DNA of 64,000 nt from Trichosphaerium sp. ATCC 40318 (GCA_038496445.1 JALMLS010000231.1:1-64000), one strand, 5' to 3'; shown: positions 54,403-58,184, numbered from the stretch's first letter. The notes: a model not told the origin generated them from the sequence alone. Numbers and translations: made by a program.

Positions 54403-57400
54403 TTAGTCGTATACACAATCTGTCAATGTGTATGTAATATCTCTATCAGGTGCACTCCAGTTACACCCGAAAATCATAATTTCTCCAGTTTGTCCCCAGA
54501 ATTTAAGCTGAAAGAAATAGCATGTTAGTAAAGTAACACCAAACCAAAAAAAAAGTAAAGAGACAAGCTCTTTTCGTTGTTATCACAAATAAAGTAGTCT
54601 TTGCACAATAAAATGTAATTTCAAGGCAATAAAAAGCATCAGTAGCACTCTGTCAACACGGAGAATTATGCTAGAGGGTTAAATTTTCATCATTGCTTTT
54701 TTTTTTTTGAATTTTGCCGTAAAAAATCTAATGCTTGTTTGTCTTGTTTGTACCTCACGTGTCATGCCAGTTTGGCTTCCTTGTTTTCCACCCCAACAAT
54801 GACCTTTTGGTGTAACACCTCTTGGTGATGTCATTGTGAGTGTAGCTTGTCTGATCTTTCCGCTAACTGTAGCTTTTACTACTTGGTTCATACCAGCCCA
54901 TGAGTAGTACTCTAGTTTTCCGTTGGCTCCCTTTTTCTCACCCCAAACTAAAAAACCGCGTGAATACAAAGCAAGTAGTGAAAAAAACCCCAACGAAATA
55001 AAAAATCAGATAGAATGCGTACGGTTTGGACTTTGGACGTCAACTTGAGGGCAAGCGCCAGGTGGATTGTTAGGCTTTTGTGTTGGCCTTTGTGTTGGTC
55101 TCTGTGTTGGCCTTTGTGTTGGTCTTTGCGTTGGCTTTTGCGTTGGCTTTTGTGTTGGTCTTTGAGTTGGTCTTTGGGTTGGTCTTTGAGTTGGCTTTTG
55201 AGTTGGCTTTTGTGTTGGCTTTTGCGTTGGCCTTTGAGTTGGTGTTGGTGTTGGCTTTTGAGTTGGCTTTTGGGTTGGTCTTTGAGTTGGTCTTTGCGTT
55301 GGCCCTTTTGGAGGAAGTGGTGTAGCGTCAACAGTGATGACTGGTATTCCACATTCTTCACATTTATCAATGAACGACCAAGTTGGAGAAATAGATGACG
55401 ATTCAAAACGCCTTCTATCACTACAACTGATACACTTACCGTAAAATACGGAAGGTACAGGTTCGCTGATCGTTTCAGGCTTGACGTCAAATGATTTAGG
55501 TTCATTCTTGATGAAGCAAGTTGACAAGAAGACAGGATCTTCAGGATCAAATGTGTATACGAATTTTGATAATGTCGTCTTTGGTTCTCTTGCTCTGATT
55601 CCGTAGCATATTTGGGTCTTTGGGTTGTTTTGATTGTTTCTTATCATATAATCGCATCTACCAGCTAGTTTGACATCGTTCTGGAAAGCGCCCTTGTAGT
55701 TCGTTGGAACAACAATAACAGCTTCACACCAATCACGTCTTTTGCACTCATCGAGGCATATTGAAGGATCGTTTGTACTAATAAGTCTGCAACCTTCGCT
55801 ACGTCTTGGTTCTGGTGCAAAGCAGTGATCTACTTTACTAAAGAGAGAAAGTAAGACACAAGAAAAAAGTTGGAAGAACAAGAAGAAAAAACAAGTTTTT
55901 TTGAACAACAAAAAAAGTAACGTACGTGAAAGCGTCTGATGAAGAAGTTGAAGAACCGTATGTGTTTGTGACACGACGAGATACAGAGTCAACATCAATA
56001 CAATCATAGTAACCCTTCCAAGAGTACTGAACAACAAACTGACCAGTACCAGCGGATGCAGGTATCTTAAAATCAGAGAAATCAACATCAGCTGTTCTAT
56101 CAATACCAAGGGCGAGTTTGAACTTGTACATTGCTAGAATGTAGTTCAACTTATCGTCTCTGTTTGTATACTCGGCAGCAGTACGACCAACAGTCTTGTG
56201 TGCTTGGTATGAGCGAAGCTCATAGATGTCGTTAAGCTTAGTAAATCTTCTTGTACCCCAAGCTGGAGGAGCAGGTCTTGCTCTGTACATTGAATCACCA
56301 GGGAAGATTCGTTTGTCGTATACGTTGGCACCATCATCTAATCCTTCTCTTATTGGGTACCCACCCTTCTTTAAAGAACGATGGAGTTGAATAGGGTCAA
56401 AGGTAGCACTTGTAGGTGCTTCTGATAAGTACTTTTCGCGTAACTCGTCTGTGAGTGCAGAAAGTTTTGTTTCGTCTTTGAAAGCAACTACAGTGAAATA
56501 GACATAAGGTGTTTTTCCTTGCCTGTCACTGTAGAAGTTTCCTGGATGTCCTTGTGTCCACTCGATCTCAAAAGTCTGTCCAGGACCGACTTGAACGTGA
56601 GGTTGAGAGTCTACTTTTGGTGGACATGGAGCGTCTTGTTGTCCTTCATTTGTTGCACGACTGTTTGTTTGAACCCAGTTGTGTGCTTTTACACCAGAAA
56701 ACATGGTGGACAGGCATACGACAACGATAAGGAATAAGGCGAAAGATCCTGTTAATGATCTACCAGAACCTCCTTTGACAGATACAAGCAAGCACATTGC
56801 GAGTACAACAAAGAGAAGACCAAAACTAAACAAAAAACAATAAGTAAAGTAGAAGAATAAAAAAAATCGGTAAAAGAAAAAAAAAGAAAACACATGATCA
56901 TACCTTCCAGTCTTTGATGCAGAGTTACTGATCTTTGTTTCTTCTACAACTACGGTATCAATGCTACGTTTTTTCATAGCAACACATGGACATAATCTTG
57001 TGTTCTTCTGGTTCTTAGCTGAGCAAGAAGCTTGTGTGTTGCACATATCATCAGAGTAGAAACAAAAGCTTCCTTTCTTGTATACACCAAGTCTGTTACA
57101 GCTTGTAATAAACTGTGGTCTACACAACAAGTTGTTCTCGCTAACTACAGCAGATAACTCTGATAAAGAGTTTGTTTGACGCATAGTAGAGCTATCACAG
57201 TCAAGACCTTCAGAAGAGCAAGCTTCATCGCAAGAGTCGCCGAGTTTTGACTCAAACCATGTTGGATTAGGCAAGCGTTGAGAAGACTCTCTTAAGCTTA
57301 CGTCTCCGCTAAGATTAGGCCAGAAGAAAGCGCCTACATTGGCGTCTCCTTCTTTAATCAAACAACGGAATGTAATCTTTCCGGTGCCGGCTTTAGGAGC

Positions 57401-58184
57401 AACAAACTTGAACGTTGAAGTTATAGGCTTCATAGCAGCGCTTGAGTGGGTTACAGTGCTGGTACACATATGATCAGTGCCGTGAGACCAAGGTGTATGG
57501 AAGAAAGCTATTATTGCGTTAGTTTAGAGCGTAAGAACGTAAGACTAGCAGAGAACGTACGAGTGCCAGCCGGAATCTTTGGTAAAATGGCCCATGTACC
57601 GACACGCTTACCAGAATCGGTTTCAGCGTACATTAGTAGCCCGCGATACTATTTGCCGTATTTAGAACGCTAACCTTAGAAAAGACGAAATTCGCCTAAA
57701 ATGGTACACGTACTCTTAACTTGTAGTCTACTACTTTAACAACGACATCTAGGACTTCTTCAGCCTTATAACTTGTTTTTGGGGAGTTCATATCATCTCC
57801 AACATAAAGACGCAATCCGTTCGTTCTTACGGTCCTATCAGACCATCCCATTACGGCGTCTTTGTCTTTACAGTCTTTGCGGTTTGGTTTACCGTCTTTT
57901 CTGCCCCACTAGAACAAAATCTTTAGAGTTTTATAGCATGCTTCAAAACAACGCGTACATCGCTAGGGCGGCATCCGAACTTGTTGTAAGTTGCATCACA
58001 GATACCAACACGTCCGTGTGAGGCAGAGAGTGAAGTGGTGACGAATAAAACTAGAGCTAAACCTAGTAATAGTGCCTACAAGCAACATTAGTTGATGAGG
58101 AATTACAACTCGCACACAATTTTTTTGCTTTAAATTCGGGTGATGTGATTTACAAGTAGGTTTTTTACGTACTAGGTTACTCAT
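54403..58184 (-). CDS. Secreted polyprotein: Reeler domain - Cys-rich - anchor - internal signal peptide - His-brace LPMO-like domain - Cys-rich - PT linker - CBM49/CBM2-like module
   Basis: Spliced N-terminus MSNL|[18 protein letters not shown]; Reeler YRGLLMYA...VGTW...VTHSS...[14 protein letters not shown]; SGVKA|HNWV; EWTQGH; [10 protein letters not shown]; (PTQK/R)n; C-terminal Trp/Cys module. Confidence 0.8.
55073..55303. repeat. Coding 12-bp tandem repeat (PTQK/PTQR x ~19), O-glycosylated linker-like
   Basis: ttggcttttgtg / ttggtctttgag units on the + strand; encodes [12 protein letters not shown]... on the - strand. Confidence 0.95.

What the first reader, a model, noticed from the sequence alone, without database searches (positions are those of the whole stretch)
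54403..58184. Polyprotein with an internal signal peptide that would expose an N-terminal His: Reeler + LPMO-like copper His-brace enzyme + carbohydrate-binding module
Seen: one continuous reading frame (the 78-nt intron 56826-56903 is in frame) runs signal peptide - Reeler domain - Cys-rich segment - AMKKR/S dibasic site - hydrophobic segment 1 ([16 protein letters not shown]) - short linker KGGSGRS - hydrophobic segment 2 ending in a V-K-A signal-peptidase-type site - HNWVQ (His codon 56681-56683). A second His is residue 46 of the predicted product (EWTQGH, 56546-56548), and [10 protein letters not shown] lies at ~55991-56020. Then come a Cys-rich domain, ~19 PTQ(K/R) repeats and a ~95-aa Cys-flanked, Trp-containing module (...CWG...[17 protein letters not shown]). 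Established: lytic polysaccharide monooxygenases need His1 with a free alpha-amine, a second His and an axial aromatic, seen as FYxCxDV in AA10; catalytic domain + P/T linker + CBM is the classic glycan-active layout. Inference: a TM hairpin with an internal signal peptide lets one mRNA give a membrane-tethered (sheddable at KKR) Reeler protein plus a free His1 LPMO-like enzyme, solving the His1 problem for an internal domain. This may be an unclassified LPMO-like family acting on cellulose (cyst wall or prey), co-produced with a Reeler partner.
Basis: partly seen in the sequence, partly recalled or inferred. Interest (0 to 1): 0.88.

Follow-up and report, generated by a model that had tools for sequence, protein, structure and literature searches.

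The report
Internal signal peptide exposing conserved histidine
One protist gene encodes a Reeler-domain protein fused, through a membrane segment and a second, internal signal peptide, to an unannotated secreted domain that always begins with histidine. More than 80 distant relatives share this layout, which suggests a new way of unmasking the N-terminal histidine that copper "histidine-brace" enzymes need.

Summary
A 9-exon minus-strand gene (58184-54403, 1009 aa) reads without a stop through: signal peptide, Reeler-like module, Cys-rich module, hydrophobic segment 1, a 7-aa basic loop, hydrophobic segment 2 ending V-K-A, then HNWVQ.

The ~240-aa domain after that His has no Pfam model. It defines a large family: 258 representatives at 50% identity, with H1, R9, H46 and G214 invariant in an 83-sequence alignment. 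In 45 members His1 follows an ordinary N-terminal signal peptide. In 87 it is internal, and position -1 is always A/G/S and -3 always A/V/T/S/G/C. In 69 of the 87, two hydrophobic segments were resolved upstream of it. Complete single transcripts from two amoebozoans and a second genomic contig show the same fusion. It is therefore one conserved precursor, very probably cut by signal peptidase before His1.

The copper histidine-brace reading fits H1, H46, the near-invariant WxGYYDCxDV motif and a confident beta-rich model. Membership in a known LPMO family is not shown: no Pfam hit, Foldseek E of 1e-3 or worse, and hhalign against AA10 matches only the last hairpin (E 0.036). I could not measure the H1-H46 distance.

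Not supported: KKR shedding (not conserved), a carbohydrate-binding C-terminal module, and cellulose as substrate.

The parts
54403..58184 (-). Whole gene: 9 exons, 1009 codons plus stop. Exons: 58184-58173, 58075-57959, 57908-57714, 57648-57561, 57507-56904, 56825-55926, 55837-55023, 54947-54754, 54507-54403.
   Evidence: splice model; GT..AG at every junction, six donors GTACG-type; total length a multiple of 3. (end-to-end alignment with homologs).
58019..58184 (-). N-terminal signal peptide, aa 1-23 (spans intron 1).
   Evidence: Sequence read. Homologs carry the same hydrophobic N-terminus followed by the CD(A/V)....GC.P..W motif. 41 of 59 full-length homologs have a hydrophobic N-terminus.
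57275..58018 (-). Divergent Reeler-like module, aa ~24-215 (spans introns 2-4).
   Evidence: Aligned with homolog N-terminal modules. 17 of 43 of those hit Pfam PF02014 Reeler. The consensus YRGLLLYAVD..VG.W matches the window's [19 protein letters not shown].
56984..57244 (-). Cys-rich module, aa 226-312, ending C-x-C.
   Evidence: Conserved cysteines in alignment A3. Recurrent weak, sub-threshold similarity to the C-terminal ~85 residues of Pfam Glyco_transf_18.
56826..56903 (-). 78-nt in-frame intron, GTATGA...TTTAG, T-rich.
   Evidence: Splicing gives a 16-aa hydrophobic segment 1, comparable to the homolog median of 18.
56777..56824 (-). Hydrophobic segment 1, [16 protein letters not shown] (aa 340-355). 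Either a stop-transfer membrane segment or the hydrophobic tail of a GPI-type signal. Preceded by the small-residue stretch SNSASKTGS.
56756..56776 (-). Short basic loop KGGSGRS (aa 356-362), predicted cytosolic.
   Evidence: Family loops average 1.2 K/R against 0.17 D/E.
56684..56755 (-). Hydrophobic segment 2, the internal signal peptide [24 protein letters not shown] (aa 363-386). V at -3, A at -1.
   Evidence: Position -1 is A/G/S in 87 of 87 internal members; -3 is A/V/T/S/G/C in 87 of 87. The uncharged stretch is bounded by R/K in 76 of 87.
55967..56683 (-). HNW domain, aa 387-625. Includes invariant His1 (56683-56681), invariant His46 (56548-56546) and [10 protein letters not shown] (56020-55991).
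   Evidence: 258 representatives. (invariant and near-invariant columns). (AlphaFold2 pLDDT 85.5, pTM 0.88, beta-rich). (no Pfam family).
55309..55927 (-). Conserved Cys-containing domain that accompanies the HNW domain in nearly all members, aa 639-815 (spans intron 6). The first half is possibly PAN/apple-like.
   Evidence: conserved DHC.F, C.GV.VVP, VCYG, DP.DP.FYSTC. (pLDDT 86). (top Foldseek hits are PAN/apple modules, but E is 0.25 or worse). (no Pfam family).
55066..55308 (-). PTQ(K/R) repeat linker, 18 units.
   Evidence: Pfam PT repeat, E 3.9e-7.
54406..55053 (-). C-terminal ~109-aa module bounded by cysteines, aa 901-1009 (spans introns 7 and 8). Nature unknown.
   Evidence: No Pfam or PDB sequence hit. 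Not found in the listed homologs.

Best explanation
A single mRNA encodes a precursor that the ER processes into two extracytoplasmic products.

Proposed sequence of events:
1. The N-terminal signal peptide takes the Reeler-like and Cys-rich half into the ER lumen.
2. Hydrophobic segment 1 stops translocation, or acts as a GPI-type signal.
3. A short basic loop stays on the cytosolic side.
4. Hydrophobic segment 2 re-initiates translocation as an internal signal peptide.
5. Signal peptidase cuts after V-K-A.

This leaves a membrane-tethered Reeler protein and a free secreted protein. The secreted protein begins with His1 of a previously unannotated ~240-aa beta-rich "HNW" domain. After that come a PAN-like Cys domain, a PTQ mucin-like linker and a C-terminal module.

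The free alpha-amine of His1 and His46 most probably form a copper histidine brace, with Tyr225/226 of the GYYDC strand as the candidate axial aromatic. The two halves are made in 1:1 ratio at the same membrane. The Reeler half, which carries a DOMON-like insert in some relatives, may be a functional or redox partner.

Shown: gene continuity, conservation of the layout, invariance of H1 and H46, and signal-peptidase-type site statistics.
Inferred: the cleavage itself, copper binding, any oxidative activity, and the partner role.
For: - Continuous frame and splice model.
- 258 family representatives.
- In 87 internal and 45 N-terminal members the domain starts H-N-W right after a small-x-small site: -1 is A/G/S in 87 of 87 and -3 is A/V/T/S/G/C in 87 of 87.
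- The uncharged stretch before His1 has median 19 residues in internal members against 17 in true N-terminal signal peptides. It is bounded by R/K in 76 of 87.
- Loops are basic, and Met occurs in the loop in only 5 of 69, so there is no conserved internal start codon.
- The two architectures interleave on the domain tree (15 changes, at least 9 forced by well-supported branches). Evolution therefore treats segment 2 and an N-terminal signal peptide as interchangeable.
- H1, R9, H46 and G214 are invariant; N2, W3, W222, G224, Y225, D227 and D230 are at least 90% conserved.
- The whole architecture is conserved end to end.
- Complete single Trinity transcripts exist in Flabellula baltica and Cavostelium apophysatum, along with many ~3-kb metatranscriptome contigs.
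- An independent genomic contig has a Reeler ORF directly upstream of the Cys-rich-TM-SP-HNY ORF.
- The AlphaFold2 model is confident and beta-rich.
- hhalign places Y225 on the conserved Phe of the AA10 FY..IDV strand. That this Phe is the axial residue near copper in AA10 rests on my own knowledge.
- Literature: a histidine brace can bind copper only after the signal peptide is removed, and all known examples use N-terminal signal peptides (PMC10952591).
Against: - No cleavage, copper-binding or activity data exist.
- No Pfam LPMO model hits any member.
- Foldseek finds no PDB or viral structure better than E 1e-3. AA10 3uam scores E 0.017 and AA11 9hdg scores E 0.047 with TM 0.30/0.37, both in the noise among generic beta-sandwiches.
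- hhalign against AA10 gives only a local C-terminal match (E 0.036, probability 1.4%), and the global alignment is meaningless.
- The tools did not return model coordinates, so I could not measure whether H1 and H46 are adjacent.
- A subclade (P0004, P0027, P0046) shows only one hydrophobic segment before His1. The simple stop-transfer/re-insertion topology does not explain this.
- The window's segment 2 has a rather long uncharged stretch of 25 residues.
Confidence: 0.6

Rival explanations
1. The same precursor and cleavage occur, but the HNW domain is a copper-binding or copper-handling histidine-brace protein rather than a polysaccharide-cleaving LPMO. It would resemble the fungal X325/Bim1-type or bacterial CopC-type proteins. 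The Reeler (and sometimes DOMON) half would serve metal reduction or uptake at the cell surface.
For: - No relation to any CAZy LPMO family is detectable.
- The fusion partner is Reeler, with weak DOMON hits in P0009 and P0015. From my own knowledge, these domains occur together in ferric-chelate reductase-type proteins.
- No carbohydrate-binding module was identified.
- Some relatives end in a membrane segment (P0025, P0066).
Against: - The near-invariant aromatic in the last strand and the PAN-like, linker-rich secreted architecture also fit a glycan-active enzyme.
- The DOMON hits are below Pfam's threshold.
Confidence: 0.3
2. Segment 2 is not cleaved. Segments 1 and 2 form a permanent transmembrane hairpin, and the product is one membrane protein with both the Reeler and HNW halves outside the cell.
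For: - The window's segment 2 uncharged stretch is 25 residues, long for a signal peptide.
- No experimental evidence for cleavage exists.
Against: - 45 relatives have the same domain directly behind a true N-terminal signal peptide, with His as the first mature residue.
- The internal class obeys the -3/-1 rule in 87 of 87 cases.
- His1 is invariant. That is hard to explain if its alpha-amine were locked in a peptide bond.
Confidence: 0.1
3. His1 and His46 are conserved for a reason other than a metal brace, for example structure or ligand recognition in an adhesion or lectin-type beta-sandwich. The N-terminal position of His would be incidental to signal-peptidase preferences.
For: - Foldseek's best, non-significant matches are generic beta-sandwich adhesin, GH-accessory and Ig-like domains.
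- No homology to any histidine-brace family was demonstrated.
Against: - Signal peptidase does not require His at +1.
- Absolute invariance of the +1 residue over 130 sequences at ~30% identity, combined with a second invariant His, is the known signature of histidine-brace proteins (PMC10952591).
Confidence: 0.15
4. The feature is an artefact: two adjacent genes (a Reeler gene and a gene with its own signal peptide) wrongly read as one, or an assembly chimera.
For: - A Met (M350) lies 37 residues before His1 and could in principle start a product with its own signal peptide.
- The bacterial-code gene calls on contig L074 split its Reeler part into a separate upstream ORF.
Against: - No stop codon separates the halves, whether or not the 78-nt intron is spliced.
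- 87 independent representatives carry the fusion in one ORF, including complete Trinity transcripts from cultured amoebozoans.
- Met is present in the loop in only 5 of 69.
Confidence: 0.02

Closest known systems
Lytic polysaccharide monooxygenases, especially AA10 (Pfam LPMO_10), and other copper histidine-brace proteins
   Same: - A secreted domain whose first mature residue is an invariant His directly after a signal-peptidase site.
- A second invariant His at the end of a beta-strand (FEIEWTQGH).
- A near-invariant aromatic in the last strand: GYYDCIDV compared with NAFYQAIDV in tool-derived AA10 sequences.
- An N-terminal HNW(I/V)xxPSR that resembles AA10's HGYVESPASR.
- A beta-rich predicted fold.
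   Different: - No statistically supported sequence or fold relationship.
- The second His is at position 46, against position 87 in the CBP21-type AA10 alignment.
- A ~110-residue insert with helices follows it.
- In two thirds of members His1 is generated from the middle of a precursor. All known histidine-brace proteins are described as using N-terminal signal peptides (PMC10952591).
Polyproteins of enveloped viruses (flavivirus, pestivirus, bunyavirus glycoprotein precursors) processed by host signal peptidase at internal signal peptides
   Same: A membrane segment, a short cytosolic loop, then an internal signal sequence with a -3/-1 site, yielding two lumenal products from one translation product (reviews found).
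   Different: This is a cellular eukaryotic gene family with introns, not a virus. There are two products only, and the cut serves to create a specific N-terminal residue.
Engineered DAF-hGH fusion with an internally placed GPI signal (Caras 1991, PMC2288913)
   Same: A lumenal protein, a small-residue site, a hydrophobic stretch, then a second secretory protein. In that experiment the internal signal still directed GPI anchoring of the upstream protein. The stretch before segment 1 here is enriched in small residues and Ser, as at a GPI attachment site.
   Different: That was an artificial construct. Here there are two hydrophobic segments separated by a basic loop. No GPI predictor or experiment was available to me.
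Reeler-domain proteins (Pfam PF02014), including Reeler-DOMON-cytochrome b561 ferric-chelate reductases
   Same: The N-terminal module is a divergent Reeler domain. Some relatives add a DOMON-like segment.
   Different: No cytochrome b561 is present. Here Reeler is followed by a Cys-rich module with weak similarity to the GT18 C-terminus, and it is fused to the HNW protein.

Membership tests
LPMO / copper histidine-brace proteins | His is the first residue of the mature protein, exposed by signal-peptide cleavage. | tested here: met
   In silico only. His is invariant and always directly preceded by a signal-peptidase-type site (-1 A/G/S, -3 small or aliphatic) in 45 N-terminal and 87 internal members. 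The cleavage itself was not observed.
LPMO / copper histidine-brace proteins | A second conserved His that completes the brace. | tested here: met
   H46 is invariant in 83 sequences at ~30% identity. Its spatial proximity to H1 was not measurable because no coordinates were returned.
LPMO / copper histidine-brace proteins | An axial Tyr/Phe on a late beta-strand near the copper. | tested here: inconclusive
   Y225 is at least 90% conserved and lies in the last strand. hhalign puts it on the conserved Phe of AA10's FY..IDV, but at E 0.036 and probability 1.4%.
LPMO / copper histidine-brace proteins | An immunoglobulin/FnIII-like beta-sandwich fold resembling solved LPMOs. | tested here: inconclusive
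   The AlphaFold2 model is confident and beta-rich. Foldseek against PDB gives nothing better than E 1e-3; AA10 3uam scores E 0.017 and AA11 9hdg scores E 0.047 with TM 0.30/0.37. BFVD fusolin scores E 0.074.
LPMO / copper histidine-brace proteins | Sequence membership in a described family (Pfam AA9, LPMO_10 and others). | tested here: not met
   No Pfam family passes for the window domain or any of 83 members; AA9 appears twice at E ~0.09. There are no PDB sequence hits. hhalign against a Pfam-verified AA10 alignment is not significant.
LPMO / copper histidine-brace proteins | Copper binding and oxidative cleavage of a polysaccharide. | not testable with these tools
   Needs protein expression, EPR/ITC and product analysis.
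Reeler domain (PF02014) | A match to the Reeler profile. | tested here: met
   The match is transitive. The window's exons are too short to score individually. The N-terminal half aligns with homologs, of which 17 of 43 hit PF02014, best E 3.3e-11. P0004, P0009, P0013, P0025 and P0033 score above the gathering threshold.
Signal-peptidase-processed precursor with an internal signal peptide | An upstream membrane segment, a basic cytosolic loop, a hydrophobic core of signal-peptide length, and a -3/-1 small-residue site. | tested here: met
   two segments in 69 of 87 members; loop K/R 1.2 against D/E 0.17; uncharged stretch median 19; bounded by R/K in 76 of 87; -1/-3 rule met in 87 of 87. Exception: the P0004/P0027/P0046 subclade has one segment.
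GPI-anchored protein (for the Reeler half) | A small-residue attachment site, a spacer, and a hydrophobic tail at or near the C-terminus. | tested here: inconclusive
   Small residues make up 0.52-0.70 of positions -11 to -3 before segment 1, against a background of 0.39. Ser makes up 0.2-0.3 against 0.077. The tail is not C-terminal in the precursor. There is a precedent for internal signals (PMC2288913). No GPI predictor was available.
PAN/apple domain (for aa 639-~725) | A PAN fold with its characteristic disulfide pattern. | tested here: inconclusive
   The top Foldseek hits are all PAN/apple modules (HGF NK1/NK2, SML-2 lectin, plasminogen, kallikrein), but E is 0.25 or worse and TM at most 0.28 on the query, up to 0.44 on the small targets. 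There is no Pfam PAN hit in 59 members.
Carbohydrate-binding module (for aa 901-1009) | A match to a known CBM family. | tested here: not met
   There are no Pfam hits for either exon piece and no PDB sequence hit. The module is absent from the listed homologs. The spliced module as a whole was not scanned, because that would have required typing the sequence.

The most novel reading that the evidence does not exclude
This is a widespread, so far unannotated protist family of copper histidine-brace (LPMO-like) proteins. It occurs in Amoebozoa and in marine and soil metatranscriptomes. In about two thirds of members the essential His1 is created from the middle of a precursor by a second, internal signal peptide. 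The same translation product also yields, in 1:1 ratio and at the same membrane, a tethered Reeler (sometimes DOMON-bearing) protein that acts as its partner or electron donor. It would be the first natural exception to the rule that histidine-brace proteins need an N-terminal signal peptide.
Probability: 0.45. Interest if true: 0.9.

Novelty: new variant of a known kind. Interest (0 to 1): 0.78.

Why it matters
Histidine-brace copper enzymes depend on a free N-terminal His. The literature states that all known ones obtain it from an N-terminal signal peptide (PMC10952591). For that reason, internal LPMO-like domains are usually dismissed as non-functional or misannotated.

A conserved natural design that makes His1 from the middle of a polypeptide would change how such domains are searched for and annotated. 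It would add a large protist family without a Pfam model to the candidate list. It would also give a rare cellular example of polyprotein processing by signal peptidase, known so far mainly from viruses.

The obligatory co-production with a Reeler module also offers a handle on the still unknown function of Reeler domains. It points to a possible built-in partner for a copper centre.

The hypothesis is directly testable with standard expression and N-terminal sequencing experiments.

Tried and rejected
**Searches that returned nothing useful**
- Pfam on individual exons of the gene: only the PT repeat and noise.
- PDB sequence searches with the domain, the family profile, the downstream-domain profile and the C-terminal exon: nothing.
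- Foldseek of the HNW model against PDB and BFVD: no match better than E 1e-3.
- Word-indexed homolog search with the 526-aa piece: one hit, P0001, which was informative. With the family profile: four short hits.

**AA10 comparison**
- I obtained bona fide AA10 sequences by scanning bacterial genomes for a back-translated HGYVESPASR pattern and verified them with Pfam.
- hhalign in local, global and alternative modes gave only the last-hairpin match.
- The pattern fixes the AA10 N-terminal motif by construction. The N-terminal resemblance is therefore a lead, not a test.
- Widening the AA10 profile returned only close relatives at 48% identity or more, so I did not use it.

**Literature**
- Searches for an internal signal peptide with LPMO, histidine brace with Reeler, LPMO with Amoebozoa, and Reeler with amoebae found no description of this family.

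**Ideas rejected**
- Two separate genes or an artefact: no stop codon, and the fusion is conserved on single transcripts.
- An independent start at M350: Met is not conserved in the loop, 5 of 69.
- KKR as a conserved shedding site: 19 of 69.

**Not done**
- I did not identify the window's organism.
- I did not scan the spliced Reeler or C-terminal modules as whole sequences, because that would have required typing long sequences.

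
Full report
**1. What is in the sequence**

The region lies in a eukaryotic window of ~38% G+C. Reading the minus strand and joining exons at GT..AG junctions gives a 9-exon gene from 58184 (ATG) to 54403 (TAA). It has 3030 coding bases and encodes 1009 aa. The introns are 50-246 nt; six donors start GTACG, the other two GTATGA and GTACAA.

- The 78-nt intron 56903-56826 is in frame.
- His codon is 56683-56681.
- Second His is 56548-56546.
- [10 protein letters not shown] is 56020-55991.

No stop codon separates the two halves, whether or not the 78-nt intron is removed.

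The order of parts is as follows:

| Residues | Part |
|---|---|
| 1-23 | Signal peptide |
| ~24-215 | Reeler-like module |
| 226-312 | Cys-rich module ending C-P-C |
| 313-339 | Linker containing KKR and the small-residue stretch SNSASKTGS |
| 340-355 | Hydrophobic segment 1 |
| 356-362 | Loop KGGSGRS |
| 363-386 | Hydrophobic segment 2, ending V-K-A |
| 387-625 | Domain starting HNWVQ |
| 639-815 | Conserved Cys-containing domain |
| 816-896 | PTQ linker |
| 901-1009 | Cys-bounded C-terminal module |

**2. The domain after the His is a large, unannotated family**

The 252-aa piece has no Pfam hit and no PDB sequence hit. An exhaustive HMMER search of 1.84 billion cluster representatives found 258 proteins at E of 1e-3 or better, and 95 at 1e-10 or better.

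I anchored each hit on the query's first residue. Essentially every one begins the domain with H-N-W-(I/L/V/M).

An 83-sequence alignment at ~30% identity shows:
- H1, R9, H46 and G214 invariant.
- N2, W3, P19, Y85, D167, Y172, P180, W222, G224, Y225, D227 and D230 at least 90% conserved.

None of the 83 members hits any Pfam family.

**3. The internal signal peptide is a conserved family feature**

The family splits into two architectures:
- In 45 members the His sits at position 6-49, directly behind an ordinary N-terminal signal peptide.
- In 87 it sits at position 88-921.

In the internal class:
- Position -1 is A (73), G (10) or S (4).
- Position -3 is A/V/T/S/G/C in all 87, the same rule as in the N-terminal class.
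- Two hydrophobic segments are resolved in the last 75 residues in 69 of 87. In most of the rest they merge.
- The loop between them is short and basic, with K/R averaging 1.2 against D/E 0.17.
- The uncharged stretch before the His has median 19 residues (IQR 17-21), against 17 (14-19) for the true N-terminal signal peptides.
- That stretch is bounded by R or K in 76 of 87.
- Met occurs in the loop in only 5 of 69, so there is no conserved internal start.

On a tree of the domain the two architectures interleave (15 changes, at least 9 forced by well-supported branches). Segment 2 and an N-terminal signal peptide have therefore replaced each other repeatedly. That is what one expects if they do the same job.

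**4. It is one gene and one transcript**

- The full-length protein aligns end to end with many homologs, for example P0002 over residues 10-784 at E 4e-123.
- P0016 and P0010 are complete ORFs on single Trinity transcripts of the amoebozoans Flabellula baltica and Cavostelium apophysatum.
- P0013 is a complete ORF on an MMETSP transcript. Many others fill ~3-kb metatranscriptome contigs.
- A GC-rich genomic contig (L074) from an unrelated organism has a Reeler-positive ORF immediately upstream of P0001. P0001 itself reads Cys-rich, hydrophobic 1, SSNSVAGSPTRS, hydrophobic 2 ...AAA|HNYIKSQHR ... EIEWSNGH.

An artefact or two-gene reading is therefore very unlikely.

**5. The upstream half**

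- Of 43 homolog N-terminal modules, 17 hit Pfam Reeler, best E 3.3e-11.
- The family consensus YRGLLLYAVD..VG.W matches the window.
- The Cys-rich module gives a recurrent, sub-threshold match to the last ~85 residues of Pfam Glyco_transf_18.
- Longer relatives insert other modules before the hydrophobic pair: weak DOMON in P0009 and P0015, and TSP1 in P0033.
- The KKR site is not conserved; a dibasic site is present in 19 of 69.
- Positions -11 to -3 before segment 1 are enriched in small residues (0.52-0.70 against a background of 0.39) and Ser (0.2-0.3 against 0.077).

That last pattern is also what a GPI attachment region looks like. Caras (1991, PMC2288913) showed that an internally placed GPI signal followed by a secretory protein still directs anchoring. 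The Reeler half may therefore be GPI-anchored rather than held by a hairpin. I could not test this.

**6. Is the domain an LPMO-like histidine brace?**

For:
- The first mature residue is an invariant His, and there is a second invariant His at the end of a strand (FEIEWTQGH).
- A near-invariant WxGYYDCxDV lies in the last two strands.
- The AlphaFold2 model is confident and beta-rich (pLDDT 85.5, pTM 0.88).
- Walton et al. (PMC10952591) state that the brace can bind copper only once the signal peptide is removed.

To test the AA10 resemblance, I retrieved real AA10 genes by scanning bacterial genomes for a back-translated HGYVESPASR pattern. I then extracted and de-replicated the mature domains and confirmed them as Pfam LPMO_10 at E 1e-41 to 1e-49.

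hhalign of the two family profiles aligns only the C-terminal hairpin...PG.YIv.Y.W..GYYDCvDV against ...G.hvilAvW..NaFYn.IDV. This puts Y225 on AA10's conserved Phe, with E 0.036 and probability 1.4%. Global and alternative modes add nothing.

Foldseek gives no hit better than E 1e-3. The top matches are generic beta-sandwiches. AA10 (3uam, E 0.017) and AA11 (9hdg, E 0.047, TM 0.30/0.37) lie in the noise. The viral library likewise gives nothing.

The tools returned no coordinates, so I could not measure the H1-H46 distance.

Conclusion: the histidine-brace reading is the best explanation of the conservation pattern. Membership in any described LPMO family was tested and not met, and catalytic activity remains open.

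**7. Downstream parts**

- The domain at aa 639-815 accompanies the HNW domain in nearly all members, including those with only an N-terminal signal peptide.
- It has no Pfam family.
- Its model is confident (pLDDT 86).
- Its best Foldseek matches are all PAN/apple modules (HGF NK1/NK2, the Sarcocystis SML-2 lectin, plasminogen, kallikrein), but at E 0.25 or worse. This is a hint only.
- The PTQ linker hits Pfam PT.
- The C-terminal module has no hit and is not shared by the listed homologs.
- Many of those homologs instead end in a different Cys motif...R.C..(Y/F)(G/A)PPC...

Calling the C-terminal module a carbohydrate-binding module, or naming cellulose as substrate, has no support here.

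**8. Mechanism proposed**

Steps that are shown:
- One ORF, conserved in order.
- An invariant His at the +1 position of a signal-peptidase-type site.
- Equivalence with members that have an N-terminal signal peptide.

Steps that are inferred:
- Signal peptide 1 translocates the Reeler half.
- Segment 1 halts translocation, or is a GPI signal.
- The basic loop stays cytosolic.
- Segment 2 re-inserts with N-in/C-out orientation.
- Signal peptidase cuts after V-K-A.
- The HNW protein is released with a free His1 and binds copper with His46.
- The tethered Reeler protein is produced in equal amount and may work with it.

One thing remains unexplained. The P0004/P0027/P0046 subclade has an N-terminal signal peptide but only one hydrophobic segment before His1. 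The simple topology model does not accommodate this.

**9. Novelty**

I found no paper describing this family or an internal signal peptide for a histidine-brace protein. A 2023 review says all known histidine-brace proteins have N-terminal signal peptides.

Both ingredients are known kinds: histidine-brace-type secreted domains, and signal-peptidase-processed precursors (the latter chiefly viral). Their combination in a conserved cellular gene family appears new.

**10. Verdict**

| Claim | My confidence |
|---|---|
| Observation | Confirmed |
| Single conserved precursor | ~0.95 |
| Cleavage before His1 | ~0.8 |
| Copper histidine brace | ~0.6 |
| Polysaccharide-oxidising LPMO | ~0.3 |
| KKR shedding, CBM and cellulose claims | Unsupported |

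Interest is high, because the central idea is directly testable.

Noticed in passing
Homologs P0004, P0027, P0046 (no window coordinates): This subclade has an N-terminal signal peptide and Reeler domain but only one hydrophobic segment directly before His1. An example is ...YSPIQWLLIVIACIFLTLNSIEPVHG|HNW. The stop-transfer plus re-insertion topology does not explain how its HNW half would reach the lumen.
   Followed up: partly
Homologs such as P0003, P0006, P0007, P0016, P0017, P0061 (C-termini): Many family members end in a shared Cys-rich C-terminal motif...CCS..C....C......R.C..(Y/F)(G/A)PPC.., that the window protein lacks. A few (P0025, P0066) end in a membrane segment plus a tail. The window's C-terminal module appears lineage-specific.
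   Followed up: no
window:56984-57244 (-) and the same module in P0003, P0007, P0009, P0033: The Cys-rich module between Reeler and the hydrophobic pair gives a recurrent sub-threshold match (E 3e-5 to 1e-3) to the last ~85 residues of Pfam Glyco_transf_18, the GnT-V C-terminal region.
   Followed up: no
Homologs P0009 (339-436), P0015 (512-558), P0033 (403-458): Longer relatives carry extra modules between the Reeler/Cys-rich part and the hydrophobic pair. These are weak DOMON matches below Pfam's threshold, and thrombospondin type 1 repeats in P0033.
   Followed up: no
window:58019-58027 (-), aa 21-25: The first signal peptide's likely cut (S-A-S|H-G) would also leave a His at the N-terminus of the Reeler half in this organism. 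Homologs do not conserve a His there, so it is probably coincidence.
   Followed up: partly
window:53705-53995 (-): The neighbouring ORF fragment contains SEKLDGVRAYWDG, which recalls the KxDGxR adenylation motif of ATP-dependent ligases (from my own knowledge). Pfam gave no hit for this 95-aa piece.
   Followed up: no
window:50210-51454 (-) and window:59275-60201 (-): The flanking genes are a MORN-repeat protein (E 1e-22) and an exon encoding a DIL domain of the myosin-V cargo-binding type (E 1e-18). Both are ordinary eukaryotic genes.
   Followed up: no
window:54403-58184 (-), intron donors: Six of the eight introns start GTACG (four GTACGT, two GTACGC); the other two start GTATGA and GTACAA. 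Seven introns are only 50-97 nt and the eighth is 246 nt. This strong donor consensus may help gene modelling in this genome.
   Followed up: no
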